Of a stretch of 64,000 nt of DNA, positions 24,966-43,278 are shown in pieces. A program made the translations under genes and the position numbers. Location: the sequence record MK250021.1; one strand, written 5' to 3'. The notes beneath the pieces are model-generated. The model saw only the letters and a program-made list of their open reading frames with translations, did not search any database and was not told the origin of the DNA. How positions within the stretch are numbered: position 1 is the stretch's first letter; each line of letters starts with the position of its first letter.

Positions 24966-24967
24966 AA

Positions 24968-26431: not shown

Positions 26432-26462
26432 TAAATATAAAATAACTATTTATTGTATTTAT

Positions 26463-26804: not shown

Positions 26805-26920
26805 ATTTGTTAAATTTTAAACCATTATTATATAGTTTATATAATAATGTATAACTAATGTTTACTAAACTTTATTTTTATAATTAAATACAATAATTAT
26901 AAAATATTTTATTTATAGTT

Positions 26921-28057
26921 ATGACAGATATAGAATGTTTAGAATTTTATAATAAAAATATTAAATACAAACGATTTCATAAGAATTATTTAATTAAGAT
27001 ATATCCTGAATTTATGAAATATATACAAAATAGATTTTCGAATTTATCTGGTGATGAATCAGTTAAAGAATTAATATATAGAATAAAATATAAATTAGTA
27101 GAAAAACCTAAATGTCCTATTTGTGGTAAATTACTTAAATTTATTAATATTAAAAATAAATACCAAACATTTTGTTCAAGAAAATGTCAATTTTCTGATG
27201 AAGGACAATAGATACAATCTCAACTTAGATTTAATACAAAATTAAAGCGCTATGGAAATGGCACGTTCACAAATAGTGATAAAGCAAAGANNNNNNNNNN
27301 NNNNNNNNNNNNAGTTACAAATGTCGGAGCTGTAAAAGAAGTAAGAGATAAAGTAAAAGAAACATGTTTAAAGAAATTTGGTGTAGATAATCCCATTAAA
27401 AATAAAAATATAAAAGATAAAGTTAAGCAAACATGTTTAATGAAATTTGGTAGTGAAACGCCATTTGAATCAAATGATATATAGAAGAAAGTAAAACAAA
27501 CATGTATAGAAAAGTATGGTGTAAAAAATATAATGCAACTTGAAGAAACGAAAGAAAAAATTAAGCAAACATGTTTAATGAAATATGGTGTAGAATATCC
27601 TATGCAATATAAAGATATAATGTTAAAATCTTTTAAAACATGCTGGCAATTAAAAAAAGGAAATAGAAGNNNNNNNNNNNNNNNNNNNNNNNNNNNNNNN
27701 NNNNNTACATTTATAGATAAAGATACAAAAAGACAATATTATTCAGAATTATATCCCTTTCATTGTGACTTTTATTTACCAAAATATGATCTATATATAG
27801 AATATAATGGAACATGGACACATGGGAAACATCCATATAACAAAGATAATGAAGATGATATAGAATTACTCAATAAATGGAAAATTAAAGCAGAAAATAG
27901 TACATTTTATAAAAATGCAATTAAAAATTGGACTGTTAGAGATCCATTAAAAAGGCAAACAGCAAAATATAATAATTTAAATTATTTAGAAATATTTTAT
28001 AATGATGATTATAAAACATATATATCTAATTATATAAATAGAATAAATGCTAAATAA
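26921..28057 (+). mobile_element. free-standing putative homing endonuclease (Zn finger, TCxxK(Y/F)GV repeats, PD-(D/E)xK-like C-terminal domain), 2 visible TAG
   Basis: CPICG...CS.KC, four TC..K(Y/F)G repeats, PFHCDFYLPKYDLYIEYNGTWTHG; frame is preserved across the N gaps. Confidence 0.75.
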
Positions 28058-28066
28058 TTTAATTAT

Positions 28067-30229
28067 ATGGCAAGACGAAGTTCAACTATTAGAGATATTA
28101 GGGCAAACGCATTAGATAAGTAGTCAGAAAGTGTAAAAATGTCAACTGTCTATACAACTGCAAAAATTAATTAGATATTAGACGATATAAAGAAAGGTAA
28201 AAAACCAGATCTCAACCCATTTTATCATGGTAAAAAAGATTTGAGAGATTCAGGAATTACTTTTGAACGAACAGAAGAGGAAGATGAAGAATATAAAAAA
28301 TGTGCAATGAATTGTATATATTTTGTTTCTAAATATGTGAAGTTTAGAAACGATAAAGGATTTACATTAGTTAAATTAAGAGATTATCAAGAAGATGTTC
28401 TTCATCTTTTTTCTGATGAAATATGGGATGAGTCTTTACAAGATGTCCGTATGAAAAACCGTAGGGTAATCCTCCTGTAGGCACGTCAAACGGCTAAATC
28501 CACAACTTGTGTTGCGTATTTTGTGTGGTATTTGATTTTCCATGCAGACCGTAACTTGATGATCACAGCTAATAAAGAATCAACAACTAAAGAGATCCTT
28601 AAAAAATGTATGGATGTATTCAAAGCATTGCCATATTTCTTAAAACCTGGTATTGAAGAATATAGTAAAACCACATTAAGAACTGAAAATGGTTGTTCGC
28701 TTCGCGCAGTTGCAACTACAGGTGATTCAGCAACAGGTGATTCAATAAATATTTTGCTCATAGATGAATGTGCGTTGATATCACAAAATATAATTAAAGA
28801 ATTCTGGGGTTCTGTATATCCAACTATGTCAAATTTCCAATAGTCTTAGATTATAGTGTTGTCAACACCACGTGGAAGAACAGGACTTTATTATGAGTTA
28901 TGGGAAGGTGCGTAGAACGGAAAGAATGGATTTGTATCTAAACGCGTGGACTGGTGGCAAGTACCTGGACGTGATGAGAAATGGAAATAGGATTAGATTT
29001 CTGTATTCGGACAGGATCTTTGGGAACGTGAGTTTGAATTATCGTTTGATACTAATGAGTCAAGACTTCTTTCTAAAACAGCATTAGAAAAAATAGATCA
29101 TATAAAGAGAAAATTTGAACATGTAGATATATATGGTGTTCCTAAGAGAGTGTCTGATAAGATATATTGGGATCCTGAATTTCATCCTGATTAGTTAACA
29201 TATGAAGATAAGATATAGAGACGATTTGTATGTATAATTGATACAGCAGAAGGTAAAGAAGCTGGTGAATATGGTAAGGAAGACGCGGATTATAATGTCA
29301 TGAATATATTTGAAATGAAATTATTAGATCCTGAAACCATATTGAAGAATCGATTAGGTTATAAAGCGGTTACATATATGAATTGTATATGTTTAGAATA
29401 GGTAGGAATTTATATTGATAATAATTTCGATGAAGAAGCATGCGCAGAAGCAGCGCAACATATAGCATTTGACGTATTCAGTAACGGTGGTGGTTATCAA
29501 GGTGAAATTGATAACATGAGAATATTGTTTGAGAAAAATTTCAATGGTAAGAATTTTTTAAAGACATTTGCAAAGCATGATTAGTATTATGAAACCATTA
29601 TATAGGGATTCTTAACAACAGGTGGAAATCACGGTAAGAAATATTTCTGCGAGTTAGGTTCCAAACTTATAGATTTAGGATAGATTATAGTTAAGTAGGA
29701 TCATGAAATTCCCGTTATGTCAACAGTTGAATAGTTGAAATCATTTGGTAAAGTTAAGAATAGTTATGCAGGTTTATCAATGCATGATGATATTGCAGTT
29801 ACAGTATTATTTGCGAGTAGATTTTTTGATGATGATGCTAATTTTGAATGGTTAGATGAATGGTTTAGTCAACTTCCTAATTATAATTATTCAACGATGG
29901 AAGAGAGAAATAAAGTTAATACTATATTGAATTATCTTCAAATATATGAATATACGAATGAAGATGATGATTAGGAATCATAGAATTATGCAGAATTATC
30001 TAATATTGCTACTTCAGGATTTGGACAGATTACACAGCAGGCATAGGGAACTTATGGTTCATTGATGCATGGACAAAATACATCAAATCCTTATTAGAAT
30101 ATGAATAATAATTATCCTATGATGAATGGTAATAATTATTATCAGTAGAATAACATGCAACCACAATATTCTGGTACATATTCAAGTCTTAGAAATAATA
30201 TTACAAATTCTAGATTTATTCGCAGATAA
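28067..30229 (+). CDS. terL: terminase large subunit, T4 gp17-like (720 aa, about 21 TAG=Gln)
   Basis: LRDYQ (Q motif), (Q)ARQTAKST Walker A, LLIDECA Walker B, STPRG coupling motif, VDWWQVPGRDE.W, IDTAEG and HDD nuclease motifs, all in one frame only if TAG is sense. Confidence 0.95.
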
Positions 30230-30259
30230 AAATAAATAATTAAAATACATTTATTTTTA

Positions 30260-31774
30260 ATGGATAGAAAATTATATAAATCATTAATAGAAGGAATATC
30301 TTAGTCATTGAAGGAAAGTTTGTTTGATGATGAGACTGATGAACTTTTGAATAATGGTGATAATTATGATAATGTTAGTTTAATGGATGATGAGTTAAAG
30401 GAACTTATATTAAATTCATTATGTACAATAGATGATTACCATATTGTAAAATCAGATGAAAATGATGGTTTACCAATGATTAAATAGGATCCTGAAAATA
30501 CATTAAGATATTATATCGCTCCATATAGAACATATAAAACTGAAGGACTTGGACCAAGGAAGAGAAAACGATATACGTTAAATTATTTTTACAGATATAT
30601 ATTAACATTTGATAATAATGGTGGAATGACATTAGATATAACAAAATTTGGAGATAAACCAAACTTTATTATTAATCTTCCATTATATAAATTTATTTGT
30701 AAAACACCATATACAATAAATGAGATAAAGCATCATTATCCATATAATGAATATAAAGAATACGCAGAACATCAATGGGAAAAGATTTGGATATTTGAAG
30801 GAACACCGTATGGAAGTCAAAAACATATACCTAATAGTTTTGTTAAGAATTTTCCAGAAATTATATCTCCTACTTTTTCTGATGAATTTAAAGATGATAT
30901 GAATCCATCCACCAAATCTGTTATATCTAGGAATTGGTTTAAATCAGATGAAATGTTTTTATTATTCATTAAAAAGTTAGTTAATAATCAGGCATGTATT
31001 GCAGATGAAAATTTCTTTGTTTATAATTAGAATACTATAGATGAAAGAGAAAAAGAAATTTTATCTGGTGATTAGGATAAACAAATAGCTAATGAAAATG
31101 ATGAAAAATTAAATTTCAGTAGGGATGTACTCGGCGAAAAATATTATCAAAAATTCTAGCAAATTTAGCAATATTTTTAGCAAAATAATACAAAATTTTA
31201 CTTAAAAACTATAAATACTTTAAGAACATGTAAAATTTGCTTAAAAGATACTATTCTTAATTTAAGGAAAGAAAACGGTTTTATATTTGATGATATTGAT
31301 AATGTAGAAGAACCAAATAGAATAGAACCATTCTTCGAAAAACAACTTTTATATAAAATGTTTTATATAATGAAATCATAGAAACTAAATGATTGGAAAG
31401 TCGATTAGACATATGATGATTGTATTCATGGTGTTGCTAAATCATTTAATTTCTATACAACAACCACAAGTTATTATGATTTAAATTCATTACCTATAAA
31501 GTTTGATAGTGATGATGCAATATATAAATTATATTATGTAATAGGTAAGGCAATAGCAGACAGTAAATCTATATATGATATTGGTTTAAAAGAATTTGAA
31601 AAATATTATTATAAAGATGATATAACATTAGGTCCAACAGAAGTATTAAGATCTTAGGATATAGAGAAAGCGAATAATACATCTTTTGATATACATAATT
31701 TTGATTATACATATTTAACAAATTAGTTAAAAACTATTATTGATAAAACATGTAAAAAATATAAACTAAAGTAA
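30260..31774 (+). CDS. hypothetical late protein (504 aa, TAG=Gln)
   Basis: Open to TAA 31772; N-terminus MDRKLYKSLIEGIS(Q)SLKE. Confidence 0.7.
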
Positions 31775-31785
31775 TTTAATAAATT

Positions 31786-32379
31786 ATGAGGATAACTACA
31801 TTAGAACAATTAAAAGAATATACCACATATACATATTTTAAAAATAATGATCCTGAATATACAAAAAAGAAAAAGGTATATATATGTCAACCTGTTAATT
31901 ATATAGATGAAGGTTTGAAACATATGGATATATGGTCTGGATATATTTTCTATAAGACTAATGCAAATTCTCGTAAAGTCGGTTTTTATGGATTTATGTT
32001 AGATATTGATAATGATCCTACATATAAAAAGAAAACGAAAGGTCAACCTGAATATATGCGAAAATTATCACCTATGTGGTATGTTAATAAAACTTTATAT
32101 AAAACACAAAGTGAAGAAAATGTTAAGTTGTTTCCAGATTTAAAATTAGAAGAAAATTTTTTAATCGAGAAAAATAAAGCTATATTTACATTAAAGAAAG
32201 AAGCAGAACAATATATAAAGGATATTAAAAACAACATTATTAAATTACCTGAGGTTGAACATATAGTTACGATGAAAACATGGTATAAAGATAAAGACGG
32301 TAATAAGATAGAAGAAACTTCTGTAAAACATTTGCCAAGTGGTAGAACTGATGTAACAAGAAAAATAGTTAAAGAATAA
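31786..32379 (+). CDS. hypothetical protein
   Basis: 197-aa ORF followed by a hairpin at 32387-32420. Confidence 0.7.
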   Translation: MRITTLEQLKEYTTYTYFKNNDPEYTKKKKVYICQPVNYIDEGLKHMDIWSGYIFYKTNANSRKVGFYGFMLDIDNDPTYKKKTKGQPEYMRKLSPMWYVNKTLYKTQSEENVKLFPDLKLEENFLIEKNKAIFTLKKEAEQYIKDIKNNIIKLPEVEHIVTMKTWYKDKDGNKIEETSVKHLPSGRTDVTRKIVKE

Positions 32380-32466
32380 TATAAATAAAAGTCTTCATAT
32401 TAGTTTATGAAGACTTTTTCTTTTTTATGACTATATAAATGTTAATTAACTATAATTTAATAATAG

Positions 32467-33621
32467 ATGAATACAGAAAATAAATTTAATTATGTTCTCG
32501 TTGGTGGAACATACAATGATAATAAAGGTAAAGAATCTGGAGTTGTAAATAAATTATATCATGCATTAGGAACATTTAATGCAAAAATGTATAATGGTGG
32601 TAATTACTATGATTTAGTCGGAGAAGCATTATCCGCCATTTCAGAAACAGATCTTATTATATGGATGGCAGATGTTGATAACAAAAAAGAGAAAGTGTAT
32701 CCAAAGAAAAATACCGGTTCTGTTTTGATTTGTTCAAAAGTTATTCGTGATGATTATACTTATAAGGATGCAATAGCACGTATATTCAAAATGCATGGTA
32801 ATGCCGTCATTGCAATTACAAAGGATAATGAAACAAATATGTTTGTATTTGAATTTTGGGACGCATTAGCAAACTGTTGGTATAGAGGAAGTGATATTGA
32901 AAAACTTGCATTAACTATATATCGTTTTTATATATTCAGTAGAGGTAGTATTCGCAGGCAAACATATAGAGATAAATCATTAGTTTCATATAATGATGGA
33001 AGACCAGATGATTTGAATGATTTCATTAAGTTAAACAATGGATTAGCAGATTTTATTCAAACTTCATGCGGAGATAGGTTTTTTGGGAATTTGTCCACAA
33101 GATGTCAGAAGTTATTTCCATCAGAACGAAAAGGTAAATTTATTTATGTAAGTCCAAGAAACGTAGATAAGAATAGATTAACACCATCTGATTTTGTATT
33201 GTTTGATACTGATGATTATTCTTATTATGCAGTAGACGAAAAAATGAAACCTTCTGTTGATTCTCCTGTACAAGCAGAATTATATAAGGAATTCCCGACA
33301 ATTAATTATATGATTCATGGACATGCATTTGTACATGTAATGAAAGATATAGATGAAGCAAATATACCAGTTGCAAGTACAGAGAATTATTTTCCATGTG
33401 GTGATCTCAGGGAATTGTCAGAAGTAAAGAAATTAATGAAGTTCATTATATATGATGAATGTCATAAGAACTATGGTATCATTAATCTTAAAGGACATGG
33501 TTTTTTAATGTTCAGTCAGACTTTTGAACAAATGCAATATATGATTAATGATATACATTCATTTGTTATGAATGATGGTAATAGATTATTTAATTTAAAG
33601 CTAATTGATTATGGGATTTAA
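32467..33621 (+). CDS. protein with C-terminal class II aldolase/adducin-like domain
   Basis: GNLSTR...SPRN.DK...KPS.DSP...IHGHA...NLKGHG metal-binding pattern. Confidence 0.65.
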   Translation: MNTENKFNYVLVGGTYNDNKGKESGVVNKLYHALGTFNAKMYNGGNYYDLVGEALSAISETDLIIWMADVDNKKEKVYPKKNTGSVLICSKVIRDDYTYKDAIARIFKMHGNAVIAITKDNETNMFVFEFWDALANCWYRGSDIEKLALTIYRFYIFSRGSIRRQTYRDKSLVSYNDGRPDDLNDFIKLNNGLADFIQTSCGDRFFGNLSTRCQKLFPSERKGKFIYVSPRNVDKNRLTPSDFVLFDTDDYSYYAVDEKMKPSVDSPVQAELYKEFPTINYMIHGHAFVHVMKDIDEANIPVASTENYFPCGDLRELSEVKKLMKFIIYDECHKNYGIINLKGHGFLMFSQTFEQMQYMINDIHSFVMNDGNRLFNLKLIDYGI

Positions 33622-34294
33622 TATTAAATCATTGTTTGTTGTAGAAGAAGATACTGCAAATAAAGATAAAGTTGAAATTAAGCAGGATAAAGTAGAACCT
33701 ACTGTAAAAAAGCAAGAAGTAAACGTAGAACAACCAGTAAAAACTGAAGATACTAATACAAATGATGAATCAAAATCTCCTACTGATGAAGTGAACCATG
33801 AATTCCTTGATAAACTTTGCAATTATTTGGAAACATGTAAAATTGAAGGTGGCGATTATATGCAATTGAAGAAAGCAGCAAATAGTGAGGGTATGCAATG
33901 TATTCCCGATGAATCGGTTAGGTTCCAAGCTGCATTTGCAACACTTAAGAGTGTAAATCCTAACCTTACAAAGGATATTATTCTTTCTTCTATTGATACT
34001 TATATTAATGAGATGAATAAGCAACGAGATATTGCTATTGATCAAGTTGAAAAGAAACGTAAGATTAATGTAGGAGACAAGTCTAAAGCTATTGCAGATA
34101 AACAAAAACAAATTGCAGATCTTCAAAATGAAATTGTTAAGTTATCTACCGAGGTATCAACAATGAAAGAAGAAGTTGATAAAGCAGATGAAGAATGTAA
34201 TAGAAATGCACGAGAATTTACGAATGCTGTTAATATTATTGTTAACGCATTGGAATCAGATAAGAAAAAGATTTCAGAAAAATTAGTAGGTTAA
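33605..34294 (+). CDS. coiled-coil protein at the start of the envelope/ABC module
   Basis: FQAAFATLK motif and long C-terminal heptads. Confidence 0.75.
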   Translation: MIMGFNIKSLFVVEEDTANKDKVEIKQDKVEPTVKKQEVNVEQPVKTEDTNTNDESKSPTDEVNHEFLDKLCNYLETCKIEGGDYMQLKKAANSEGMQCIPDESVRFQAAFATLKSVNPNLTKDIILSSIDTYINEMNKQRDIAIDQVEKKRKINVGDKSKAIADKQKQIADLQNEIVKLSTEVSTMKEEVDKADEECNRNAREFTNAVNIIVNALESDKKKISEKLVG

Positions 34295-34302
34295 ATTAAT
34301 AT

Positions 34303-34485
34303 ATGAAAGTAATAATTAAGAATTATGATTCTACAAAAGCAAATGATATTGTAATTCCTGTTGAAAATAATATGGATAAACATGTAGACTTTTCTAGCGG
34401 TTATGTAGTATTATCAGATGGAAATAATGTTAAGAAAGTTTATATTGATTTTAACAAATATCCTGAAGTAGAATTAGATTTATAA
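34303..34485 (+). CDS. hypothetical protein
   Basis: 60-aa ORF between module genes. Confidence 0.5.
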   Translation: MKVIIKNYDSTKANDIVIPVENNMDKHVDFSSGYVVLSDGNNVKKVYIDFNKYPEVELDL

Positions 34486-34506
34486 TATATAAAAATATTT
34501 TAAAGT

Positions 34507-35574
34507 ATGTCAGATTATAGTACAACAGATGTTATTAATGTTGCGAAGAATAAAGTATCACGATGGGAGAAACCTGGTGGTACAACGGGTATGATTGTAT
34601 TGGGTGTTGCCGTTGGTGCTATTGCAATTAATATTACACCTATTATGAATTTTATTGCGGCTGCTTGTGCAAGTACACTTAGTGCAATTGGAATGGCTGC
34701 TGCTCTTTTCCTTGTATTATATTGTTTGTTTGACCCACGTATTCGTAATATAGGTTCAACTATCTATTTTATGATTATGAGAAAGGTTGAAGGACTTCTC
34801 GTAGATTATGATCCTATTTCTATTGTGAAAAGAAAGATTGCAGAGATGAATAAGAAAATTCAGGAGATTACTGATAATATGGGTAAACTTCGTGGATTGA
34901 TTGATAAATCAGAGAAACGTATTCAGGAAAAGAGAAAACAATGTGATCATGATTTTCAAATGCTTAATAAGTATAAGCAAACAGGAAAGATGCAAGATGC
35001 TGCTGTTTATGAAAGACAAGTAGCAAGACTTACAGAAGTAATTAAGAATTCTGAAGCGAGACTTACTCAATCAAAGCAGTGGTATGAGATTATGGGCAAA
35101 CTTAAGCATCAGGCAGACCTTACAGTTCTTGATGCAACAAATGAGATTAATGAACGCGTAGAAGAATGGGAAATGATTAAGGCACAACACAAGGCATTCA
35201 CTTCTATTGTCGGTATTATCAACGGTAAGGATGATCAATTCAGTTTGTTTACTCGTGCAATGGATCATATGGCAGATGATATTTCTCAGAAGCTTGGTGA
35301 GATGTCATTTATTATTGAGGAAACTGGAGGTTTGATGTCAAAGATTGATATGGATAATCTTGTGATGTCTGATAAAGCAAATGCTCTTCTTGCTCAATAT
35401 AATGCAGGTGGTTTGGATGCAGTTCTACTTGGTAGTTTTGCAAATCAACCAATTGAACATCAACCATCAGAAACTGTAGAATTTAAGGAAGTAGAATATG
35501 CAAAAACTAATAGTAATGCAAGTTCTATTACAAATAATAAACAACAAACGCTTAGTCAACCTAATTGGTTCTAA
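34507..35574 (+). CDS. membrane-anchored long coiled-coil protein, PspA/IM30-like
   Basis: Two N-terminal hydrophobic helices, then DP.....K.I.......I...M..L..., a PspA-like helical bundle. Confidence 0.6.
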   Translation: MSDYSTTDVINVAKNKVSRWEKPGGTTGMIVLGVAVGAIAINITPIMNFIAAACASTLSAIGMAAALFLVLYCLFDPRIRNIGSTIYFMIMRKVEGLLVDYDPISIVKRKIAEMNKKIQEITDNMGKLRGLIDKSEKRIQEKRKQCDHDFQMLNKYKQTGKMQDAAVYERQVARLTEVIKNSEARLTQSKQWYEIMGKLKHQADLTVLDATNEINERVEEWEMIKAQHKAFTSIVGIINGKDDQFSLFTRAMDHMADDISQKLGEMSFIIEETGGLMSKIDMDNLVMSDKANALLAQYNAGGLDAVLLGSFANQPIEHQPSETVEFKEVEYAKTNSNASSITNNKQQTLSQPNWF

Positions 35575-35677
35575 GAATTATTTTATCATTCATTTCATTA
35601 ATTATATTTTTTATTTAATCTTAGTGAACTATATGGATTTATTTCTATAGTTCACTTTTTATTTAATATTTTATGTG

Positions 35678-35685
35678 TATCTTTG
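35678..35685 (+). promoter_or_regulatory. Bacteroidota-type -7 element TATCTTTG
   Basis: Upstream of ATG 35723. Confidence 0.7.
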
Positions 35686-35722
35686 TATTGTAAATTATTT
35701 AACTAATTAAAATAGAAAAATT

Positions 35723-36064
35723 ATGTTAAAGGTCGTAGATACATCATATTATATAATTAATAATAAAGAAAAGAAAGAATTCTTTATATATTATGATATA
35801 AACCATAAAATAGATTGTAATATGTCATTATGGGATATTATGTTTGATTTAAATATTGAAAATGTAAATGAAGATAATAAAGATTTTCTTTTACAAGAAT
35901 TCTTTAAAAAGAATTGGACACGATTCTTTATGATTAAATCTATTCCTTATGATACTATGGTAAATGTATTACCATGGGATAGTATTTTAAATATGGTAAA
36001 TCAAATTGCGCAAACAATAGTTAAATATGAAGATTTAAAAGCTATTCCATCAAACAATAAGTAG
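35723..36064 (+). CDS. hypothetical protein (ends at TAG, or at TAA 36076 if read through)
   Basis: 113-aa ORF. Confidence 0.65.
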   Translation: MLKVVDTSYYIINNKEKKEFFIYYDINHKIDCNMSLWDIMFDLNIENVNEDNKDFLLQEFFKKNWTRFFMIKSIPYDTMVNVLPWDSILNMVNQIAQTIVKYEDLKAIPSNNK

Positions 36065-36133
36065 TTTTTAAAATAAAAGAATAATAGAAATAAACAAATT
36101 AATTTAATAACTTTAATAAAAGATTAAAAAATT

Positions 36134-37717
36134 ATGGCAAATGTAGTTTTGCGACCTTGGGTAAAGGTTGTAGGAGTTATTGCGGTAGTTGCCGCTATTA
36201 TGTTTGGTGCATCGAAATTCTTCGGTGGTAATAGTGATGATAAGTCATCTTCTAATAGTGGAGGATTGTTCAGTAACATTTTCTCTGGTAGTGATGATAA
36301 CGTTATTACTATTGGTACAAATACATATGCAGGATTCCTTCCATTTATGTATTTGAATAATGGTCTTAATCCTAATGAGGATTGCCCTATTTACAAGGAA
36401 TATGGTATTAAGTTGAAGATTGTCGTACAAGATGATTTTGCTGCAGGTCGAGCCGCATTTAAGAACGGCGATATTGATATTATTTATTGTACTGCAGATG
36501 CTCTTCCTGTTGAAATGAGCGAAGGTTCTGATATGAATGATACAAAATTCTTCAATATTTCTAACTGGTCACGAGGTGCTGATGCCATTGTAGTTAATAA
36601 AGGAATTCAGAATGTAAGCGGACTTATTGGTAAGGTTGTTTGTTGTTCACAGGGTACAGCATCTCATACACTTTTGTTGAATACACTTGAGACAAATGGT
36701 ATTGGAACAGATAAAGTAAACATGAGTAATTCTGTTGATCCAAATAAGGTTAATGTGAAGGTTGTAGATAGTGGCTTGGATGCAGCAAGTGCATTCCGTG
36801 CAGGTTCATGTGATGCAGCAGTTGTATTCTCTCCAGATGATCAGGATTTGGTTGCAACTGTGAAGGGAGCGCATGTATTGATTTCTACAACACAAGCATC
36901 AAATATTATTTGTGATGGTTTGATTGCAAAGCAGAGTTATCTTGATTCTAATAAGGAAAATATAAAGAAACTTATTTCTGCATTGTTGTGGGCAAATAAT
37001 CTTATGAATACTGATAGTAAAGCTGTAGCAACAGCAGCAAAGGCATTTGCAACTGCATATAATACAGATGAGAATTTCGCTATTAATGGTTCAAAGAATA
37101 TTCATTATGTCACATTGGGTGATGCTCAGAATTTCTTTGGGTTGAATAGCTCATATACAGGTGTAAAGGGAGATGAATTGTATTCAAAGATGGCTCGTAC
37201 ATATGAGTCTCTTGGACTTTGTAAGCATCCACTTGCATGGAGGAAAGTATCTTATTCTGATATTATTGAGAGTATTGCATCTGAGCCTGATAAGGTAAAG
37301 GGCGATCAGTCTGCAGAAGCAGGTCCAAAGTTTAATGAAACATCTATATCAGATGCAGAAACGAAGACAGCAATTTCAGACAAGAAGGTAACTATTGAAT
37401 ATGGTGTAAATAGTGATATTCTTGATAACGCAGCACAGAGTATTATTGATAAGGAATTTGCTGGTATTGCAAAACAGTTTGCAGGTTCAAAGATTCGAAT
37501 TATTGGTAATACAGATAATACAGGTAATTATGCATATAATGTAGATTTGTCTCGTAGACGTGCACAGTCTGTTGCTAATTATCTTGTAAAAGAATATGGA
37601 TTTGATAAGAATCGTTTCATTATTATTGGTAATGGTCCAAAGCGTGCTGTTACAGATGGTGTAGTAGGAGATAATAAGTCATATCGTTCTACTGATTTTC
37701 AGTTGATTTCAGAGTAA
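36134..37717 (+). CDS. ABC substrate-binding protein (NitT/TauT/NMT1-like) fused to a C-terminal OmpA-like peptidoglycan-binding domain
   Basis: N-terminal TM anchor; T.D.L...S.GADAIVV...L.GK.V....GT.SH.LL; C-terminal IIGNTDNTG..YNVDLSRRRAQSVANYL...G.G. Confidence 0.88.
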   Translation: MANVVLRPWVKVVGVIAVVAAIMFGASKFFGGNSDDKSSSNSGGLFSNIFSGSDDNVITIGTNTYAGFLPFMYLNNGLNPNEDCPIYKEYGIKLKIVVQDDFAAGRAAFKNGDIDIIYCTADALPVEMSEGSDMNDTKFFNISNWSRGADAIVVNKGIQNVSGLIGKVVCCSQGTASHTLLLNTLETNGIGTDKVNMSNSVDPNKVNVKVVDSGLDAASAFRAGSCDAAVVFSPDDQDLVATVKGAHVLISTTQASNIICDGLIAKQSYLDSNKENIKKLISALLWANNLMNTDSKAVATAAKAFATAYNTDENFAINGSKNIHYVTLGDAQNFFGLNSSYTGVKGDELYSKMARTYESLGLCKHPLAWRKVSYSDIIESIASEPDKVKGDQSAEAGPKFNETSISDAETKTAISDKKVTIEYGVNSDILDNAAQSIIDKEFAGIAKQFAGSKIRIIGNTDNTGNYAYNVDLSRRRAQSVANYLVKEYGFDKNRFIIIGNGPKRAVTDGVVGDNKSYRSTDFQLISE

Positions 37718-37735
37718 TTAAAATAAATTATAAAC

Positions 37736-37785
37736 ATGCGGTTTATAGAAAATAATTTTTATTAAATTCTATAAACCGCATTTTT
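37736..37785 (+). terminator. intrinsic terminator
   Basis: ATGCGGTTTATAGAA/TTCTATAAACCGCAT followed by a T-run. Confidence 0.75.
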
Positions 37786-37789
37786 AATT

Positions 37790-38287
37790 ATGAAATATAA
37801 GCATGAATTAATAGGTAATAAAGTATTAATTATATGTGATTGTGATGGTATAAGTATTCATCGAATATATTGTGCATATATATTGGGTGAAGTTATTGAT
37901 TATAATCCTATTACAAATGAAATAAGTATTAGGATAATTAATAATGATATGAATTACTATAGAATGTACAAATTATTTTATAGTAAATTAGGAACACGTA
38001 CATATTTTGAATTTAAACTTAATACATATGATCCTTTTGATCATAAATACTGTTCAGATAATCGTTTAGGATATATAGATCCAAGGGACTATAATGATTT
38101 ATGGTGGTATGAAGCATATTCAGGTAATGAAGCAATATCATTATTAAAAAATAACCTATTAGAAACAAAAGATAAACCTGTATATAATTATTGTTATCTA
38201 TCTACTGATTGTTATGGTAGTTTTAAATCTAAAAAAGAATATTTAACATATCTTTTAAATGAATTAAGTAATGAAAATACAGAATGA
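37790..38287 (+). CDS. paralog family X member 1
   Basis: MKYKHELIGNKVLIIC...YCAYILGEVIDYNP...DPF...KKEYL..LL.EL. Confidence 0.75.
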   Translation: MKYKHELIGNKVLIICDCDGISIHRIYCAYILGEVIDYNPITNEISIRIINNDMNYYRMYKLFYSKLGTRTYFEFKLNTYDPFDHKYCSDNRLGYIDPRDYNDLWWYEAYSGNEAISLLKNNLLETKDKPVYNYCYLSTDCYGSFKSKKEYLTYLLNELSNENTE

Positions 38288-38711
38288 TTTAATAGGTAAA
38301 AAAGTACTAATTATTCATACATATGTTAGTAAATTCTTTAGGAGTTATTGTACATACCATATAGCAACAATTAAATATTATTATCCATCAGGTAATTTTA
38401 TTATTGTAGAATGTCCGAATATTAATCGCACAAGATTTACATTAATAGATCATGATGATCCATTTATAAATAAAGATTATTCAGATAAAAAATTGGCAAT
38501 GAATTTTTCAACTAATGATGGATGGTATTATGTATTTACAAATAAATCTTCAATCAGACAATTAGAATATAATTTAATACATTATAAAAATAAACGTTCA
38601 TTCAATAGCTGTAGAATGATAGTTTCTACGGGACGTTTAATGACAACAAAAGAACGGAAAAACTGTTTTGAAACATTATTAAGTAAAATACAAGATGAAA
38701 TATCGAAATGA
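38271..38711 (+). CDS. paralog family X member 2
   Basis: MKIQNDLIGKKVLIIH...YC.Y.I..I..Y.P...DDPF. Confidence 0.75.
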   Translation: MKIQNDLIGKKVLIIHTYVSKFFRSYCTYHIATIKYYYPSGNFIIVECPNINRTRFTLIDHDDPFINKDYSDKKLAMNFSTNDGWYYVFTNKSSIRQLEYNLIHYKNKRSFNSCRMIVSTGRLMTTKERKNCFETLLSKIQDEISK

Positions 38712-39153
38712 CTTAATAGATAAGAAAGTATTAATTATATGTAATAGTTCTGGTCCTAACAACTGGAATCATTATTGTAGTTATGTTGTTGGGAAAGTAA
38801 TAAGTTATAATCCATCTATTAATTCTATAATGATTGAATATGGTGATAAAACACGAAACTATTTTTCTTTAATTGATTATAATGATCCATTTAAGAAACA
38901 TAATGATAGTTATAATAGAGGACTATATAAACGATTAGCATATAAAATACCATTGAATAGATATTCAGAAAGTTGGTGGTATGATGTCTTTTCATTACAA
39001 TCTGCAGAAAAATTATTAAATCATAATATTAAACATTCACGAGAAAAATATGTATATGGTGAATGTATATTATCAAAAGTATGTTATAATCATATAAGTA
39101 AAAAGAATTTTTTTGAATTATTATTAAAAGAATTAAAAGATGAATCTAATTAA
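38695..39153 (+). CDS. paralog family X member 3
   Basis: MKYRNDLIDKKVLIIC...YCSYVVGKVISYNP...DPF...KK.F..LLKEL. Confidence 0.75.
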   Translation: MKYRNDLIDKKVLIICNSSGPNNWNHYCSYVVGKVISYNPSINSIMIEYGDKTRNYFSLIDYNDPFKKHNDSYNRGLYKRLAYKIPLNRYSESWWYDVFSLQSAEKLLNHNIKHSREKYVYGECILSKVCYNHISKKNFFELLLKELKDESN

Positions 39154-39973
39154 ACGTTTATTTAAATTTGGAGGAACTTCTGATTTTGGTACGTTAACAA
39201 ATGTAATTATTAGTATCATAGGTGCTGTTATTATCATTATGGGATGGCATTTCATTTCTGCATATGATATTGTATCTAGTAATATTCTTCCAGATCCATT
39301 TAAGGTAATTGGTAGTATTCCTACACTTATTACTGAAAATCATTTGTTTGCAAATATTTGGTATACAGTTAAACTAAATCTTTCATGTTATGTATATGCA
39401 ATTTTACTATCATTTCCAATAGGATTTTTTATAGCATTATATCCTATTAATAATATACTATTTGGAAAATATATTAATTCTGTAAGATTTATTCCATTGC
39501 CTTCTATTACAGGAATTTTCTTAGCAATATTTGGACTTACATTTGGAATGAAAGTATGGTTTCTTACTGTTGCAATTATGATTTACATTATTCCTTCTGT
39601 TGTTAATAAGGTAAATGATTTACAAAATCCTGCTAATGAAAAAGATAATGTATATCTTCAGACCGCACAAACAATGGGTATGTCTGCATGGCAGAAGTTC
39701 AGATATGTATATTTCCCTTATGTAACAGGTGGTGTAGTTGATTCTTGTATTGATTTGCTTGCAATTAGTTATAGTTATGTAGTTATTGCAGAAATGATTT
39801 ATAAGGATGGAACTATAAGTGGTATGGGTGCATTGATTAATACGATGGTAAGACAATCACAAATGTCTTCCGCATATGCATTGTTATTCTTAATTATTAT
39901 TATTGGTTGCGTACAGGATTTCTTGTTTAAGAAAGGTGCAAGACTATTATTTCCTTACAAATATAAAAATTAA
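39140..39973 (+). CDS. ABC transporter permease (NitT/TauT/SsuC-like)
   Basis: ILP.P..V, multiple TM helices, A.TMG.S.WQ.F..V.FP EAA-type loop, .SYVVIAEM. Confidence 0.9.
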   Translation: MNLIKRLFKFGGTSDFGTLTNVIISIIGAVIIIMGWHFISAYDIVSSNILPDPFKVIGSIPTLITENHLFANIWYTVKLNLSCYVYAILLSFPIGFFIALYPINNILFGKYINSVRFIPLPSITGIFLAIFGLTFGMKVWFLTVAIMIYIIPSVVNKVNDLQNPANEKDNVYLQTAQTMGMSAWQKFRYVYFPYVTGGVVDSCIDLLAISYSYVVIAEMIYKDGTISGMGALINTMVRQSQMSSAYALLFLIIIIGCVQDFLFKKGARLLFPYKYKN

Positions 39974-39981
39974 TAAAGATT

Positions 39982-40971
39982 ATGAGTGATTTTAAAACAT
40001 TATTTGGACAAAATAATCAAGAGGATAAGAAAACACCTATCCTGTTAGAACAAGAAAAAAATATTAATTCATCTACAAATGATTCCAGTATTCCTGATGT
40101 AAGTAATAATGTAGATAAGCCAAATACACCAGATGTAAGTTTACCTAATAATCAGAAAAAAGATCGGGGTGATGGTAAAATAGATGTTGTTAATTTTAAA
40201 AATTTAACACAAATATTTAATAAAGGTAAGAAAAATGAATATAAATTATTTGAAAATTTCTCTTTGAATATAAATGATATTCCGAATGATTTTCAATCCG
40301 TGAGTATTATGGGCACATCTGGCTGTGGAAAAAGCAGATTAGTACGTCTTTTATGTGGATTGGATGACGTTCAATCTGGAAGTGTTTCTGTATATGGTAA
40401 ATCATTATCAGAATTTGGTAATATTCCTATGGTATTTCAAAATCATAGTAATAGTAATTATCCTTGGATGAAAATTATAGATAATGTAATGTTACCAATG
40501 ATTATTAGAGGATTTTCTAAAAAAGATGCGTATGAGAAAGCATTACAATTGATTAAGTTAGTTGGACTTGAAGGAAAAGAAAACGATTATCCAAATATGC
40601 TAAGTGGCGGACAAAATCAACGTATAGCAATTAGTAAATGTCTTGCTTCGAATTCTCAAATTATTGTATTAGATGAAGCAACTGGCGCATTAGATATAAA
40701 AATGAAAAAAGAGATTCAAAATATTATTTTAAAAATATTATATGATTCAAACGTAGATCCTACTATTATTAATATTACTCATAGTATTGAAGAGGCTCTA
40801 TATATAAGTAATAAAATTTTTATATTAAAAGCTAACCCTTGCGGTATTGTTAAAGTTATGAATATTCATTATCCAAATGAAGAAAATATGCACCGAGATG
40901 AATGGATTTTTCAAACAGAAGAGTATAAAAAATATTATTTAGAATTATCAAAAACATTATCTAATATTTAA
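39982..40971 (+). CDS. ABC transporter ATP-binding protein (NitT/TauT-like)
   Basis: GTSGCGKS Walker A, MVFQ Q-loop, LSGGQ signature, IVLDEA Walker B, ITHS H-loop. Confidence 0.95.
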   Translation: MSDFKTLFGQNNQEDKKTPILLEQEKNINSSTNDSSIPDVSNNVDKPNTPDVSLPNNQKKDRGDGKIDVVNFKNLTQIFNKGKKNEYKLFENFSLNINDIPNDFQSVSIMGTSGCGKSRLVRLLCGLDDVQSGSVSVYGKSLSEFGNIPMVFQNHSNSNYPWMKIIDNVMLPMIIRGFSKKDAYEKALQLIKLVGLEGKENDYPNMLSGGQNQRIAISKCLASNSQIIVLDEATGALDIKMKKEIQNIILKILYDSNVDPTIINITHSIEEALYISNKIFILKANPCGIVKVMNIHYPNEENMHRDEWIFQTEEYKKYYLELSKTLSNI

Positions 40972-41101
40972 ATAGATAAATATAATGGATTCATAATTAT
41001 TTATGAATTTATATTTTGCAAAGTTGAGCATATTACTAAATTTAGTAATATGCTCTTTTATTTTATAGATAAATATAATGCAAAATATAAATTAAATAAT
41101 T

Positions 41102-42067
41102 ATGAGAAATATTACACATGATGAATTTATCACATGTGCTAGATCTATACACGGTGATAAATATGATTATTCATAGACAAAGTTTATTAATAAATCTACG
41201 TTAATTAAAGTATCTGATAATATACATGGTATTTTTGAAATTCTTCCATTTAAACATTTATTATACGATGGATATAATAAAAATTATTTAAATAGTTATG
41301 CGAATGAATACAAAAAACATTTTATAGAAGTATGTAAATTAGTTCATAATAATAAATATGATTATTCAAAAACAGTATATATACATTCATAAACAAAAAT
41401 GTTAATAACATGTCCTATACATGGTGATTTTTATCAATTACCAATGTCACATATACATGGTAAAGGTTGTAGTAAATGTGGTGATTTATCTACAGCTTAT
41501 AAACAAGCATATACAACTGAAGAATTTATTAATAAATCAAAATAGATACATGGTAATAAATATGATTATTCTAATGTACATTATATAAGTAACAAATATA
41601 AGGTTATTATAGGATGTCCTATACATGGTAATTTTTTATAGTCTCCTGATAAACATTTAAATGGTCATGGTTGTCCAAAATGTGTTTTATATAAATTAGA
41701 AAATACAATATCATTATTACTTGATAACAATAATATTAAATATAATAAAAATTATAAAGAATTTAAATGGTTAATAAATGATATTAATCATTCATTAGAA
41801 TTAGATTTCTATATACCTGAATATAATATTGCTATAGAATGTTAGGGTAAATAGCATTTTGAACCAGTTGAAAAATTTGGAGGAAATGAAGCATATTAAA
41901 TATAGGTTAAAAATGATTAGATAAAATAGACATTATGTAAATAGCATAATATAAAATTATGTTATTTTTGTGACAAATATAACTATATAAATAATTATAA
42001 ATTAGGATATTTAACATATAAAACAGAAAATTTATTAGAATATATACGATTTCATTTATTAGTTTAA
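41102..42067 (+). pseudogene. degenerate homing endonuclease (KYDYS...CPIHG repeats plus nuclease domain); TAG=Gln, with two in-frame TAA stops
   Basis: Three HGxKYDYS-type repeats, CP.HG, G.GC.KC, LDFYIPEYNIAIEC(Q)GK(Q)HF; in-frame TAA at 41390 and 41897. Confidence 0.8.
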
Positions 42068-42072
42068 TATAC

Positions 42073-42420
42073 ATTTCAATAGCCCGTTCACTTGCATGTG
42101 ATTCAAAATTACTTATGTTAGATGAATATTCGTCAGGTCTTGATTATTTCACTAAATTTGAATTACAAGATCTTCTATTAAGTATTTTTAATAATAGAGA
42201 TGTAGATAGAACATTCTTGATAGTTACTCATAATATTTCAGAGGCTGTATATCTTTCAAATCGTATTTATATATTGGAACCAAATCCATGTAGAATCAAG
42301 GATGTAATTGATATTAAATTCAGTCAACCAAGAACACAAGCTATTCGTGAAACAGATGAATTTAAAAATTATCAAGCTAAAGTTCTTAAAGCATTAAATG
42401 AAACAATTAATAATAAGTAA
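42073..42420 (+). pseudogene. C-terminal half of a second ABC ATPase (Walker A and signature missing)
   Basis: ISIARSLACDSKLLMLDEYSSGLD...IVTHNISEAVYLSNRI; in-frame TAA upstream at 42019; no N-terminal half seen. Confidence 0.75.
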
Positions 42421-42825: not shown

Positions 42826-43278
42826 ATGAAAATATTAAATGATATAGTTAATAAAAAAGTATTAATAATATATAAATGTAATGGTCCTGCTGGATGGCAT
42901 AGAGATTATTGTGGTTATAAAATTGGGAAAATAGTAGAATATAATATTGAAAATAATACTATTAATATTGAAGATAAAAAGAAAAATATAAAAACATATA
43001 AAATTATAGATAAAAAAGATCCATTTAATTTAAATTTAATACAAAATAATGATAATAGATTCGCATATTATCATATTTCAAAATATAGGCAAATACGTGA
43101 ATGGGAAAATGTTTTTATATATAATGATGCATTAACTATTTTAAAAAATAGTATTAAACAATCACATTCACAATATGTATATAAACTATTTTGTTTATCT
43201 TCATTTTCATATGGTAAAAAAACAAAGAAAAGGTTTTTAAGAGATTTATTAAAGGAATTAGAAGAAAATTATCAATAA
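42826..43278 (+). CDS. paralog family X member 4
   Basis: MKILNDIVNKKVLIIY...YCGYKIGKIVEYN...DPF...KK.FL..LLKEL. Confidence 0.75.
   Translation: MKILNDIVNKKVLIIYKCNGPAGWHRDYCGYKIGKIVEYNIENNTINIEDKKKNIKTYKIIDKKDPFNLNLIQNNDNRFAYYHISKYRQIREWENVFIYNDALTILKNSIKQSHSQYVYKLFCLSSFSYGKKTKKRFLRDLLKELEENYQ

What the first reader, a model, noticed from the sequence alone, without database searches (positions are those of the whole stretch)
33605..42420. Phage-encoded envelope module: PspA-like protein + SBP-OmpA fusion + ABC permease + ABC ATPase(s)
A TAG-free, co-oriented block encodes a coiled-coil protein, a membrane-anchored PspA/IM30-like protein, an inner-membrane-anchored substrate-binding protein fused to an OmpA-like peptidoglycan-binding domain, a NitT/TauT-type permease and an ATPase. 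A remnant of a second ATPase follows. A near-complete importer-like apparatus tethered to the cell wall and paired with a membrane-remodelling protein is unusual cargo for a phage. It could be a nutrient importer (AMG), an envelope-stress/PMF maintenance system during a long infection, or a superinfection-exclusion device that senses periplasmic signals. Function is inference.
Basis: partly seen in the sequence, partly recalled or inferred. Interest (0 to 1): 0.75.

Follow-up and report, generated by a model that had tools for sequence, protein, structure and literature searches.

The report
Phage copy of PspA-like/ABC envelope cassette
This megaphage of Prevotella carries an intact, selected copy of a five-gene cell-envelope cassette (a membrane-anchored PspA-like protein, its partner, and an ABC importer whose binding protein is tied to the cell wall); many large phages and some Bacteroidales chromosomes share it, so it is real and conserved but not unique, and nobody has yet tested what it does.

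Summary
The window is Prevotella phage Lak-B2 (100% identity to MK250021.1).

The core order A–C–E–permease–ATPase is collinear in about 40 other large-phage loci. A more distant phage clade (including Bacillus phage G) has it rearranged. It also lies in Bacteroidales chromosomes (24 of 401 species genomes), flanked by housekeeping genes. C, E and the permease are under strong purifying selection between Lak-B and Lak-C (dN/dS 0.06–0.15).

The remnant is the tail of the ancestral ATPase. A 2-kb cassette carrying a foreign ATPase (40% identical to the Lak-A/C one) and a decayed homing endonuclease replaced the rest.

The operon type was already noted in bacteria (Ravi et al. 2024). PspA next to ABC transporters in huge phages was noted in an October 2026 preprint. 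This is a divergent new member of a known, experimentally untested kind. Function and ligand remain inference.

The parts
32387..32418 (.). Terminator-like hairpin (13-bp stem, T-runs on both strands). Probable upstream limit of the transcription unit.
32467..33621 (+). Upstream 384-aa gene, found only in Lak phages. Its C-terminal half weakly resembles class II aldolases (AraD/MtnB type). Its end overlaps the start of A by 17 nt, so it is probably co-transcribed. It is not part of the conserved core.
   Evidence: (E 1e-8)
33605..34294 (+). Gene A (229 aa; likely start ATG at 33611). It has a short N-terminal hydrophobic-then-acidic motif, a low-complexity linker, and a conserved helical domain with a coiled coil. 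It is always immediately upstream of C. Function unknown.
   Evidence: no library or PDB match; dN/dS 0.29
34303..34485 (+). Small 60-aa ORF, found only in Lak-A/B/C.
34507..35574 (+). Gene C (355 aa). Two N-terminal TM segments followed by a cytoplasmic PspA/IM30 (ESCRT-III-like) helical domain: a hairpin of helices 103-159 and 162-238, then helices 244-271 and 277-301.
   Evidence: dN/dS 0.059
35723..36064 (+). Small 113-aa ORF that ends on TAG. Found only in Lak phages.
36134..37717 (+). Gene E (527 aa). N-terminal TM anchor (residues 12-30), a linker, an SsuA/TauA-type substrate-binding domain (about residues 55-400), a second linker, and an OmpA-like peptidoglycan-binding domain (about residues 407-520). 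The TD..G...N..LS..RA motif is kept.
   Evidence: dN/dS 0.153
37790..39153 (+). Three tandem paralogous genes with overlapping ends (165, 146 and 152 aa; 29-36% identical to each other). Lak-A/C has a single copy; other phages and bacteria have none. Function unknown.
39140..39973 (+). ABC importer permease (277 aa, six hydrophobic segments, EAA-like coupling loop at residues 174-193). NitT/TauT type.
   Evidence: 94% identical to Lak-C1, dN/dS 0.070
39982..40971 (+). ABC ATPase (329 aa, all catalytic motifs intact). Only the first ~50 nt are orthologous to the Lak-A/C gene; the rest is a xenolog from a homologous cassette of another phage lineage.
40032..42075 (+). A 2.0-kb segment with no DNA homology to Lak-C1. 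It replaces 0.55 kb of the ancestral ATPase gene.
41026..41055 (+). Terminator-like hairpin (13-bp stem followed by a T-run), 55 nt after the ATPase stop. Probable end of the operon.
41102..41899 (+). Decayed homing endonuclease gene. It is a single reading frame with 5 in-frame TAG codons, broken by a TAA at 41390-41392. It covers only part of the phrog_559 profile.
42115..42420 (+). C-terminal remnant (Walker B to the end) of the ancestral Lak ATPase. It is 93% identical to the C-terminus of the Lak-A/C ATPase.
42826..43278 (+). Fourth paralog of the small-gene family at 37790-39153.

Best explanation
The stretch holds the Lak-B2 copy of a conserved five-gene envelope cassette: A, then TM-anchored PspA-like C, then TM-anchored SBP-OmpA E, then a permease, then an ATPase. 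Large phages and Bacteroidales bacteria share this cassette and have exchanged it repeatedly.

Shown:
- The domain identities.
- The strict collinear co-conservation.
- Intact catalytic and peptidoglycan-binding motifs.
- Purifying selection on the core genes.
- The position of the cassette in the standard-code (TAG-free) part of a TAG-recoded genome.

Inferred mechanism:
- E sits in the periplasm, held to the inner membrane by its N-terminal helix and to peptidoglycan by its OmpA-like domain.
- E captures a small solute, probably anionic or zwitterionic, and hands it to a type I ABC importer.
- C, with A, forms ESCRT-III-like assemblies on the cytoplasmic face of the same membrane and keeps it sealed or shaped.
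- The phage expresses the set before the switch to TAG decoding, to keep the host envelope, proton motive force and solute balance working through a long megaphage infection.

In the Lak-B lineage, a homing-endonuclease cassette overwrote most of the original ATPase gene and supplied a working foreign ATPase. The old 3' end was left behind as the 'remnant'.
For: Identity:
- The stretch is 100% identical to Lak-B2.

Domains:
- The binding-domain model has pLDDT 90.9; its best matches are TauA and SsuA, at E 1e-17 to 1e-15.
- The motifs were checked directly.

C as a PspA relative:
- The model has pLDDT 79.7.
- The Foldseek PDB top ten are all Vipp1/PspA, and a phage PspA/IM30 protein is in the BFVD top four.
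- The C family aligns with the TM-anchored family that sits next to E in the distant clade: hhalign 95.8%, E 6.5e-9.
- That distant-clade family aligns with a diverse PspA profile: 89.6%, E 1.9e-6, over 203 columns.
- C itself aligns with the PspA profile at 66%, E 5.6e-5, over helix 1, in the same register.
- The PDB profile hits to Vipp1 are also in a consistent register.

Co-conservation:
- Across 83 phage loci, the permease is present in 80, the ATPase in 73, C in 41 and A in 38. The order is collinear.
- Bacterial chromosomes carry the same order, with housekeeping flanks.
- 24 of 401 Bacteroidales genomes carry it.

Selection:
- dN/dS is 0.059 for C, 0.070 for the permease and 0.153 for E.

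Operon limits:
- Terminator-like hairpins bracket the unit.

ATPase replacement:
-.

Literature:
- PMC11237479 (section 18) describes the same operon type and the same proposed link between membrane remodelling and solute transport.
Against: - No library HMM (NCBIfam TIGR02977, precomputed Pfam) recognises C as PspA.
- The wide structural search does not separate ESCRT-III/PspA from BAR-type helical hairpins; all score near Z 10-12.
- The link from C to PspA is transitive, and the direct score is modest.
- The ligand is unknown. Hits to named transporter families are all far below their curated cut-offs.
- No RNA data were found, so early expression is inferred only from the absence of TAG codons.
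- No evidence of physical contact between C or A and the transporter; the one complex prediction gave no verdict.
- C-family proteins also occur without the transporter, for example next to an AAA ATPase or fused to an ATPase fragment. The coupling is therefore not obligatory.
Confidence: 0.6

Rival explanations
1. A plain nutrient-uptake auxiliary gene set. The ABC importer brings in a limiting nutrient, such as a sulfonate like taurine, a pyrimidine or thiamin precursor, urea, nitrate or bicarbonate, to feed phage replication. A and C are unrelated neighbours, and the OmpA-like domain only positions the binding protein.
For: - The binding domain, permease and ATPase all fall in the NitT/TauT group.
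- The closest folds are TauA, SsuA, ThiY-type and CmpA.
- A type I permease with an EAA-like loop implies import.
- Phage-borne ABC transporters are usually filed as auxiliary metabolic genes (phrog_293).
Against: - A and C keep their place next to E across phages and bacteria, in two deeply split clades, even where gene order is rearranged.
- C is the most strongly constrained gene of the set (dN/dS 0.059).
- The double tether of the binding protein is invariant over 23-99% identity. A simple nutrient importer does not need it.
Confidence: 0.15
2. A membrane-building device. The TM-anchored ESCRT-III-like protein, powered or guided by the ABC system and pinned to the wall by E, bends or buds the inner membrane to make a phage-specific structure, such as vesicles or a replication or assembly compartment. 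It does not repair the membrane.
For: - ESCRT-III/PspA/Vipp1 proteins remodel membranes (established knowledge; PMC11237479).
- Some C relatives sit beside AAA ATPases, as Snf7 does with Vps4 (PMC11237479 section 18).
- The cassette is enriched in very large phages.
Against: - The same cassette lies in ordinary bacterial chromosomes with no phage genes around it. Its basic role is therefore cellular.
- No AAA ATPase is present in the Lak locus.
- There is no imaging or structural evidence.
Confidence: 0.1
3. A sensing or exclusion device. E reports a periplasmic signal or the distance between membrane and wall. The system blocks superinfection, or times lysis, rather than carrying solute in bulk.
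For: - A binding protein fixed at both ends is an odd design for free shuttling of solute.
- The system lies in the standard-code, presumably early, gene set.
Against: - There is no signalling output domain in any of the five proteins.
- The ATPase and permease keep every catalytic and coupling motif.
- Presence in bacterial chromosomes argues for a housekeeping-type role.
Confidence: 0.1
4. A recently captured host importer that is now decaying and gives the phage no benefit.
For: - A truncated ATPase copy and a broken homing endonuclease lie at the 3' end.
- Homologous cassettes exist in Bacteroidales chromosomes.
Against: - All five core genes are intact, and C, E and the permease have dN/dS of 0.06-0.15 over dS of about 0.6-1.0.
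- The cassette is present in Lak-A, B and C and in very distant large phages.
- The nearest chromosomal copy is only about 55% identical.
- The disrupted ATPase was replaced by a complete one with all motifs.
Confidence: 0.03

Closest known systems
Bacterial operons of TM-bearing PspA/Snf7 homologs with an ABC ATPase, a permease and a PBPb-OmpA solute- and peptidoglycan-binding protein (Ravi et al., mSystems 2024, PMC11237479, section 18; example OGG56892.1)
   Same: The components are the same: a TM-anchored PspA-superfamily protein, an ABC ATPase, a permease, and a binding protein fused to an OmpA-like domain. The inferred logic, membrane remodelling linked to solute transport, is also the same.
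   Different: That paper describes these as occasional extensions of loci that also hold an AAA+ ATPase; the Lak locus has none. The paper does not mention the fifth conserved gene (A), the occurrence in phages, or the Bacteroidales distribution. I could not compare OGG56892.1 directly.
Huge-phage PspA loci adjacent to complete ABC transporters (bioRxiv 10.64898/2026.10.24.761521, October 2026; 15 of 189 loci)
   Same: A phage-encoded PspA sits next to a binding protein, a permease and an ATPase, and is read as membrane-stress management during infection.
   Different: That survey required a Pfam PF04012 hit on proteins of 200-300 aa. Lak C is 355 aa and carries no PF04012 hit, so it would not have been counted. 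The text I read does not mention the OmpA fusion or chromosomal homologs.
PspA / Vipp1(IM30) / LiaH with their membrane anchors (PspBC, LiaI)
   Same: A long helical hairpin followed by shorter helices. A 'DP' motif opens helix 1 in the same register. The domain lies on the cytoplasmic face of the inner membrane.
   Different: The N-terminal amphipathic helix is replaced by two covalently attached TM segments (one in the distant clade). There is no PspF-, PspBC- or LiaFSR-type partner. The family models do not recognise the sequence.
NitT/TauT-family ABC importers (TauABC, SsuABC, ThiXYZ, CmpABCD/NrtABCD; TC 3.A.1.16-17)
   Same: The binding-protein fold, a six-TM permease with an EAA-like loop, and the ATPase family.
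   Different: The binding protein is TM-anchored and carries a C-terminal peptidoglycan-binding domain. All scores are far below the curated cut-offs of the named transporters, so the substrate cannot be transferred from them.
MotB / Pal / YiaD-type OmpA-like peptidoglycan anchors
   Same: The OmpA-like domain has the conserved Asp and Arg motif. As in MotB, an N-terminal TM helix tethers the inner membrane to the wall.
   Different: A whole substrate-binding domain is inserted between the TM helix and the OmpA-like domain.

Membership tests
PspA/IM30 (ESCRT-III superfamily) | Recognised by the family's sequence models (Pfam PF04012 / NCBIfam TIGR02977) | tested here: not met
   - C has no TIGR02977 hit at E<=0.1, nor do any of the 71 family members.
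- Its close relatives carry no precomputed Pfam domain.
PspA/IM30 (ESCRT-III superfamily) | Remote sequence homology to PspA/Vipp1 over the helical core | tested here: inconclusive
   - Direct comparison: hhalign of the C family against a diverse PspA profile gives 66%, E 5.6e-5, over 60 columns.
- Profile against PDB: Vipp1 at E 0.027, in a consistent register.
- Transitive chain: C family against the distant-clade family gives 95.8%, E 6.5e-9. That family against PspA gives 89.6%, E 1.9e-6, over 203 columns, and against Synechocystis PspA gives E 0.006.
PspA/IM30 (ESCRT-III superfamily) | ESCRT-III-like fold: a long helix 1 / helix 2+3 hairpin followed by helices 4 and 5 | tested here: met
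   - The AF2 model (pLDDT 79.7) has helices 103-159, 162-238, 244-271 and 277-301.
- The Foldseek PDB top ten are all Vipp1/PspA, at E 3e-3 to 4e-2.
- 6zvs_A aligns with rmsd 2.6 Å over 136 columns.
- PspA 4whe scores Z 10.5, rmsd 2.6 Å.
- Caveat: BAR-type hairpins score as high.
PspA/IM30 (ESCRT-III superfamily) | N-terminal amphipathic helix for peripheral membrane binding | tested here: not met
   It is replaced by two hydrophobic TM segments at residues 27-52 and 57-75. The distant clade has one TM.
PspA/IM30 (ESCRT-III superfamily) | Assembly into rings, rods or carpets on membranes | not testable with these tools
   This needs purified protein and electron microscopy.
Type I ABC importer, NitT/TauT group | ATPase with Walker A, Q-loop, LSGGQ signature, Walker B and H-loop | tested here: met
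   GTSGCGKS at 111, LSGGQ at 207, IIVLDE at 227 and ITH at 265. Best family hit is SaoA at 4e-45, with TauB and NtrCD next.
Type I ABC importer, NitT/TauT group | Permease with about six TM helices and an EAA coupling loop | tested here: met
   Six hydrophobic segments, and an EAA-like loop (with Q in place of E) at residues 174-193. Hits to SaoP at 5e-19 and TauC at 2e-8.
Type I ABC importer, NitT/TauT group | Binding protein of the NMT1/SsuA fold | tested here: met
   PF13379 and PF09084 on relatives. Model pLDDT 90.9; best matches TauA 6ssy at E 1e-17 and SsuA 2x26 at E 5e-16.
Type I ABC importer, NitT/TauT group | Equivalence to a named transporter (score above the curated cut-off), which would allow the substrate to be transferred | tested here: not met
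   All hits are far below cut-off, for example SsuA_fam 67.9 against 163.5 bits and SaoA 154 against 360 bits.
OmpA-like (OmpA_C/MotB/Pal) peptidoglycan-binding domain | Domain model match, with the conserved Asp and Arg of the TD..G / LS..RA motif | tested here: met
   PF00691 on relatives. YiaD, Pal and OmpA models at 1e-16 to 1e-9. OprF C-terminal domain 5u1h at 4e-10. The motif lies at residues 460-477. The Arg-Ala is invariant across the family, but the Asp is not kept in the phage G / MT835556 clade.
OmpA-like (OmpA_C/MotB/Pal) peptidoglycan-binding domain | Actual binding to peptidoglycan | not testable with these tools
   This needs a pull-down with purified sacculi.
Free-standing homing endonuclease (phrog_559 / Hef-like type) | Complete, uninterrupted endonuclease reading frame | tested here: not met
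   One frame is interrupted by a TAA at 41390-41392. The second part covers only positions 214-370 of the 607-position profile.

The most novel reading that the evidence does not exclude
The cassette is one machine. The binding protein is pinned to both the inner membrane and the wall, so it reports the gap between them (turgor or plasmolysis). It gates import of a compatible solute, while the covalently anchored ESCRT-III-like protein, together with A, seals or reshapes the same patch of membrane. This would be a turgor-coupled envelope-homeostasis device. Megaphages switch it on early, under the host's genetic code, to keep a doomed cell intact for a very long replication cycle. It would stand in for the classical Psp response in Bacteroidales that lack PspA.
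Probability: 0.15. Interest if true: 0.8.

Novelty: new member of a known kind. Interest (0 to 1): 0.5.

Why it matters
Lak megaphages are widespread in human and animal guts, and almost none of their accessory genes have a known role. This cassette is one of the few Lak accessory modules with three useful properties: recognisable parts, strong selection, and a chromosomal counterpart in cultivable bacteria (Prevotella sp. 10(H), Dysgonomonas sp. 521). The counterpart means its function can be tested genetically without a cultured megaphage.

The cassette also links a bacterial ESCRT-III-like protein to an ABC importer and to the cell wall in a fixed gene order. That makes it a concrete handle on how PspA-type proteins are recruited and used outside Proteobacteria.

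The ATPase replacement shows a homing endonuclease swapping a core subunit for a 40%-identical foreign one without loss of the operon. This is a clear example of how modular these cassettes are among phages.

Tried and rejected
- Library HMMs for PspA on C and on 71 relatives found nothing.
- hhalign of the C family against E. coli PspA alone, or against a low-diversity enterobacterial profile, aligned only the DP motif at low probability. It improved only with a diverse Bacteroidota PspA set.
- The wide structural search (VIA-align) did not discriminate between helical hairpin families.
- The ESM Atlas fold search was uninformative, with TM below 0.3.
- The Atlas feature search gave only unnamed clusters and a weak PspA lead at 0.75.
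- Gene A has no significant match in NCBIfam, PHROGs, PDB profiles or the Atlas. It is not PspA-like by hhalign.
- A complex prediction of the helical domain of A with the cytoplasmic domain of C gave no verdict (score 0.00), which is evidence neither for nor against binding.
- The sequencing-run search found only DNA holders and no RNA run, so expression could not be checked and read laying was not used.
- The search for related loci with the C-family alignment failed because no stretch was conserved enough.
- No whole genome is held for the window.
- The last word-based homolog search, run on E. coli PspA, returned only near-identical enterobacterial sequences.
- I considered ligand assignment from the TauA and SsuA matches and dropped it. 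Identity is only 15-18%, and no residue-level superposition was available.
- The sigma-70 promoter scan found fewer sites than in shuffled sequence, and it does not cover Bacteroidota-type promoters.

Full report
**What the window is.** The stretch 33605-42420 is 100% identical to Prevotella phage Lak-B2 (MK250021.1, positions 281605-290420). It is 98-99.5% identical to Lak-B1 to B9 and about 82% identical, in pieces, to Lak-A and Lak-C. The window has 26% G+C. Long reading frames appear in blocks 17.6-31.8 kb and 49.9-64 kb only when TAG is read as a sense codon. The block 31.8-41.0 kb is open under the standard code. No tRNA gene lies in the window.

All the following genes are on the + strand.
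- A (33605-34294) has no TM segment and a C-terminal coiled coil.
- C (34507-35574) has two hydrophobic segments and then long helices.
- E (36134-37717) has one N-terminal TM helix, an SsuA/NMT1-type binding domain and an OmpA-like domain. The evidence is NCBIfam SsuA_fam at 8e-19 and YiaD/Pal/OmpA models at 1e-16 to 1e-9, full-length phrog_25518 at 2e-49, and Pfam PF13379, PF09084 and PF00691 on relatives. The OprF C-terminal domain matches at 4e-10, with the TD..G/LS..RA motif kept.
- The permease (39140-39973) has six hydrophobic segments and an EAA-like loop.
- The ATPase (39982-40971) has every catalytic motif.
- The 101-aa ORF at 42115-42420 starts at Walker B and is an ATPase tail only.

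'TAG-free' is true for 33605-40971. It is not true for 41102-41899, which is a homing-endonuclease frame with five in-frame TAG codons and a disrupting TAA.

**Is C PspA-like?** No library model says so. The family is large: 756 clusters at 50% identity, with typical lengths of 320-360 aa.

An AlphaFold model built on 71 diverse members (pLDDT 79.7) shows TM helices. These are followed by a hairpin of helices 103-159 and 162-238, and then two shorter helices.
- Foldseek against the PDB puts Vipp1/PspA structures in all ten top places, at E 3e-3 to 4e-2.
- A phage PspA/IM30 protein is fourth in the viral library.
- The exhaustive structural search is not discriminating. ESCRT-III, PspA and BAR hairpins all score Z 10-12.

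Sequence evidence came from a second family. In a distant clade of the same cassette, the gene just upstream of E encodes a 245-276-aa protein (phrog_33389) with one TM helix.
- This family aligns with the C family at 95.8% probability, E 6.5e-9.
- It aligns with a diverse PspA profile at 89.6%, E 1.9e-6, over 203 columns.
- One member hits Synechocystis PspA at E 0.006.
- C itself aligns with the PspA profile at 66%, E 5.6e-5. The match covers helix 1 and starts at the shared 'DP' motif, in the same register as the weak PDB profile hits.

I read C as a divergent, covalently membrane-anchored member of the PspA/ESCRT-III superfamily, with a probability of about 0.75.

**Conservation.** E-like fusions occur in the 735-kb phage LR756501 (39% identity), in Bacillus phage G (gp249 and gp250) and in a human-gut phage contig. 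A scan of IMG/VR gave 137 confirmed relatives, and 78 loci were fetched.

In 83 phage loci, a permease lies within 7 kb in 80, an ATPase in 73, a C-family gene in 41 and an A-family gene in 38. In every locus where E is at least about 32% identical, the order is A-C-E-permease-ATPase, tightly packed. The distant clade has the order permease, ATPase, an unknown gene, the TM-PspA-like gene, then E. The five-gene core is thus a unit. The Lak-specific genes (the 60-aa and 113-aa ORFs and the paralogs) are insertions into it.

Between Lak-B2 and Lak-C1 the dN/dS values are as follows.

| Gene | dN/dS |
|---|---|
| C | 0.059 |
| Permease | 0.070 |
| E | 0.153 |
| A | 0.29 |

**The cassette is also bacterial.** A scan of species-representative genomes found it in the cultured isolates Prevotella sp. 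10(H) (on an 875-kb contig) and Dysgonomonas sp. 521, with all five genes in order. In Prevotella sp. 10(H), the flanks are TsaC (above its curated cut-off), an acetyltransferase, a TarF-like transferase, a rhomboid-like protein and a GT4 glycosyltransferase. The G+C content is even across the region.

Full-length E fusions were found in 24 of 401 sampled Bacteroidales genomes and in 3 of 170 genomes of one family. One lies at 2.07 Mb in a 4.86-Mb contig. Its order is the same, and its neighbours are CstA, superoxide dismutase and a two-component system.

A maximum-likelihood tree of E interleaves phage and bacterial rows. At least eight switches are forced by well-supported branches. This indicates repeated exchange; the direction is not resolved. 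Several 'MAG' rows inside the Lak clade are probably mis-binned phage contigs.

Canonical PspA (TIGR02977) was found in 53 of 301 Bacteroidota genomes. It was not found in Prevotella sp. 10(H), nor in Lak-C1, LR756501 or phage G.

**The 'second ATPase'.** The Lak-B2 ATPase is only 40% identical to the Lak-A/C ATPase, although the adjacent permease is 94% identical. The remnant, in contrast, is 93% identical to the C-terminus of the Lak-A/C ATPase.

DNA homology with Lak-C1 stops at 40031, about 50 nt into the ATPase gene, and resumes at 42076. So 2.0 kb replaced 0.55 kb of the ancestral gene. The insert holds an ATPase body and the endonuclease. The ATPase body is 55% identical to that of another phage's cassette (L046).

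The remnant's dN/dS against Lak-C1 is 0.079 at dS 0.85. It was therefore under selection for most of the divergence, and the event is recent, within the Lak-B lineage. A strong terminator-like hairpin at 41026-41055 follows the working ATPase, and another at 32387-32418 precedes the upstream 384-aa gene. This suggests a single transcription unit from 32467 to 40971.

**Mechanism.** Shown: the parts, their order, their motifs and the selection on them. Inferred: E is a periplasmic solute receptor fixed to both the inner membrane and peptidoglycan. It feeds a type I ABC importer, while C, together with A, maintains or shapes the same membrane from the inside.

The binding-domain model (pLDDT 90.9) is closest to TauA and SsuA, followed by thiamin/pyrimidine-type and bicarbonate-type binders. 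Identity is only 15-18%, and all family scores are far below the curated cut-offs. The ligand is therefore open.

The cassette lies in the TAG-free part of a TAG-recoded genome. It is established for recoded phages that recoded codons concentrate in late genes (Borges et al. 2022; cited from memory, not checked here). This fits expression before the code switch, but no RNA data were available.

C relatives also occur without the transporter, so the coupling is frequent but not obligatory.

**Comparison with what is known.** Ravi et al. (PMC11237479, section 18) already reported that TM-bearing PspA/Snf7 homologs occur in operons with an ABC ATPase, a permease and a PBPb-OmpA protein. They proposed the same link between membrane remodelling and transport.

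A preprint of October 2026 (10.64898/2026.10.24.761521) reports complete ABC transporters next to 15 of 189 huge-phage PspA genes. Its filters (a PF04012 hit on proteins of 200-300 aa) would miss Lak C.

I found no paper on the Lak locus itself. Four points appear to be new:
- The Lak member, with its unrecognised PspA-like protein.
- The fifth conserved gene (A).
- The chromosomal Bacteroidales counterparts in cultivable strains.
- The endonuclease-linked ATPase swap.

**Verdict.** This is a divergent new member of a known, experimentally untested kind of system. It is conserved and selected, and its function is still inferred.

Noticed in passing
window 17600-31800, 41100-41900 and 49900-64000: Block-wise TAG recoding. 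Long frames of up to 1366 aa, with 2-23 in-frame TAG codons each, are open only if TAG is read as sense. The blocks 1-17.6 kb and 31.8-49.8 kb are mostly open under the standard code. No suppressor tRNA gene lies in this window.
   Followed up: partly
window 40032-42075, compared with L004 8292-8841: An endonuclease-linked xenologous replacement of the ABC ATPase. A foreign ATPase body and a decayed, TAG-containing homing endonuclease overwrote two thirds of the ancestral gene, whose tail survives. In Lak-B4, B7 and B8 the match spans about 200 more bases of the record than of the query and is split into two pieces; I did not look at this.
   Followed up: yes
window 37790-39153 and 42826-43278: A Lak-specific family of small proteins (146-165 aa, Cys-rich N-terminal half). 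Lak-B has three tandem copies and a fourth downstream, while Lak-A/C has one copy. There is no match in PHROGs or NCBIfam.
   Followed up: partly
window 32467-33621: A 384-aa Lak-only gene whose C-terminal half weakly resembles class II aldolases and epimerases (AraD/MtnB, E 1e-8). Its stop overlaps the start of gene A, and it lies inside the same terminator-bounded unit.
   Followed up: no
L006 8001-9332 (protein P0244): In a relative, a C-family protein is fused in frame to a fragment of an ABC ATPase. An A-family gene lies just upstream, but there is no binding protein or permease nearby. This looks like a cassette that lost its transporter and kept the A-C pair.
   Followed up: partly
L008 1426-3293 (protein P0247 and its neighbour): Another C-family member sits directly upstream of a 277-aa AAA ATPase. 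This recalls the Snf7-Vps4 pairing noted by Ravi et al.
   Followed up: no
L001 7824-11029 (Bacillus phage G gp249, gp250); L091 3447-6194; L092 5607-8422: Some cassettes carry two tandem copies of the binding-protein/OmpA-like fusion. In the phage G / MT835556 clade, the conserved Asp of the OmpA-like 'TD' motif is replaced while the Arg-Ala is kept.
   Followed up: no
L089-L109 (genome-contig hits labelled as MAGs): Many 'Bacteroidales', 'Paludibacteraceae' and even 'Mycoplasmatota' MAG contigs carry E proteins that are 63-71% identical to Lak. One of these contigs is 387 kb long. They fall inside the Lak-like phage clade of the tree and are likely megaphage contigs mis-binned into bacterial genomes.
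   Followed up: partly
window 12489-27705: Ten runs of N (1089 bases in all; the longest is 15386-16080) interrupt the window. They were left as they are and lie outside the finding.
   Followed up: no
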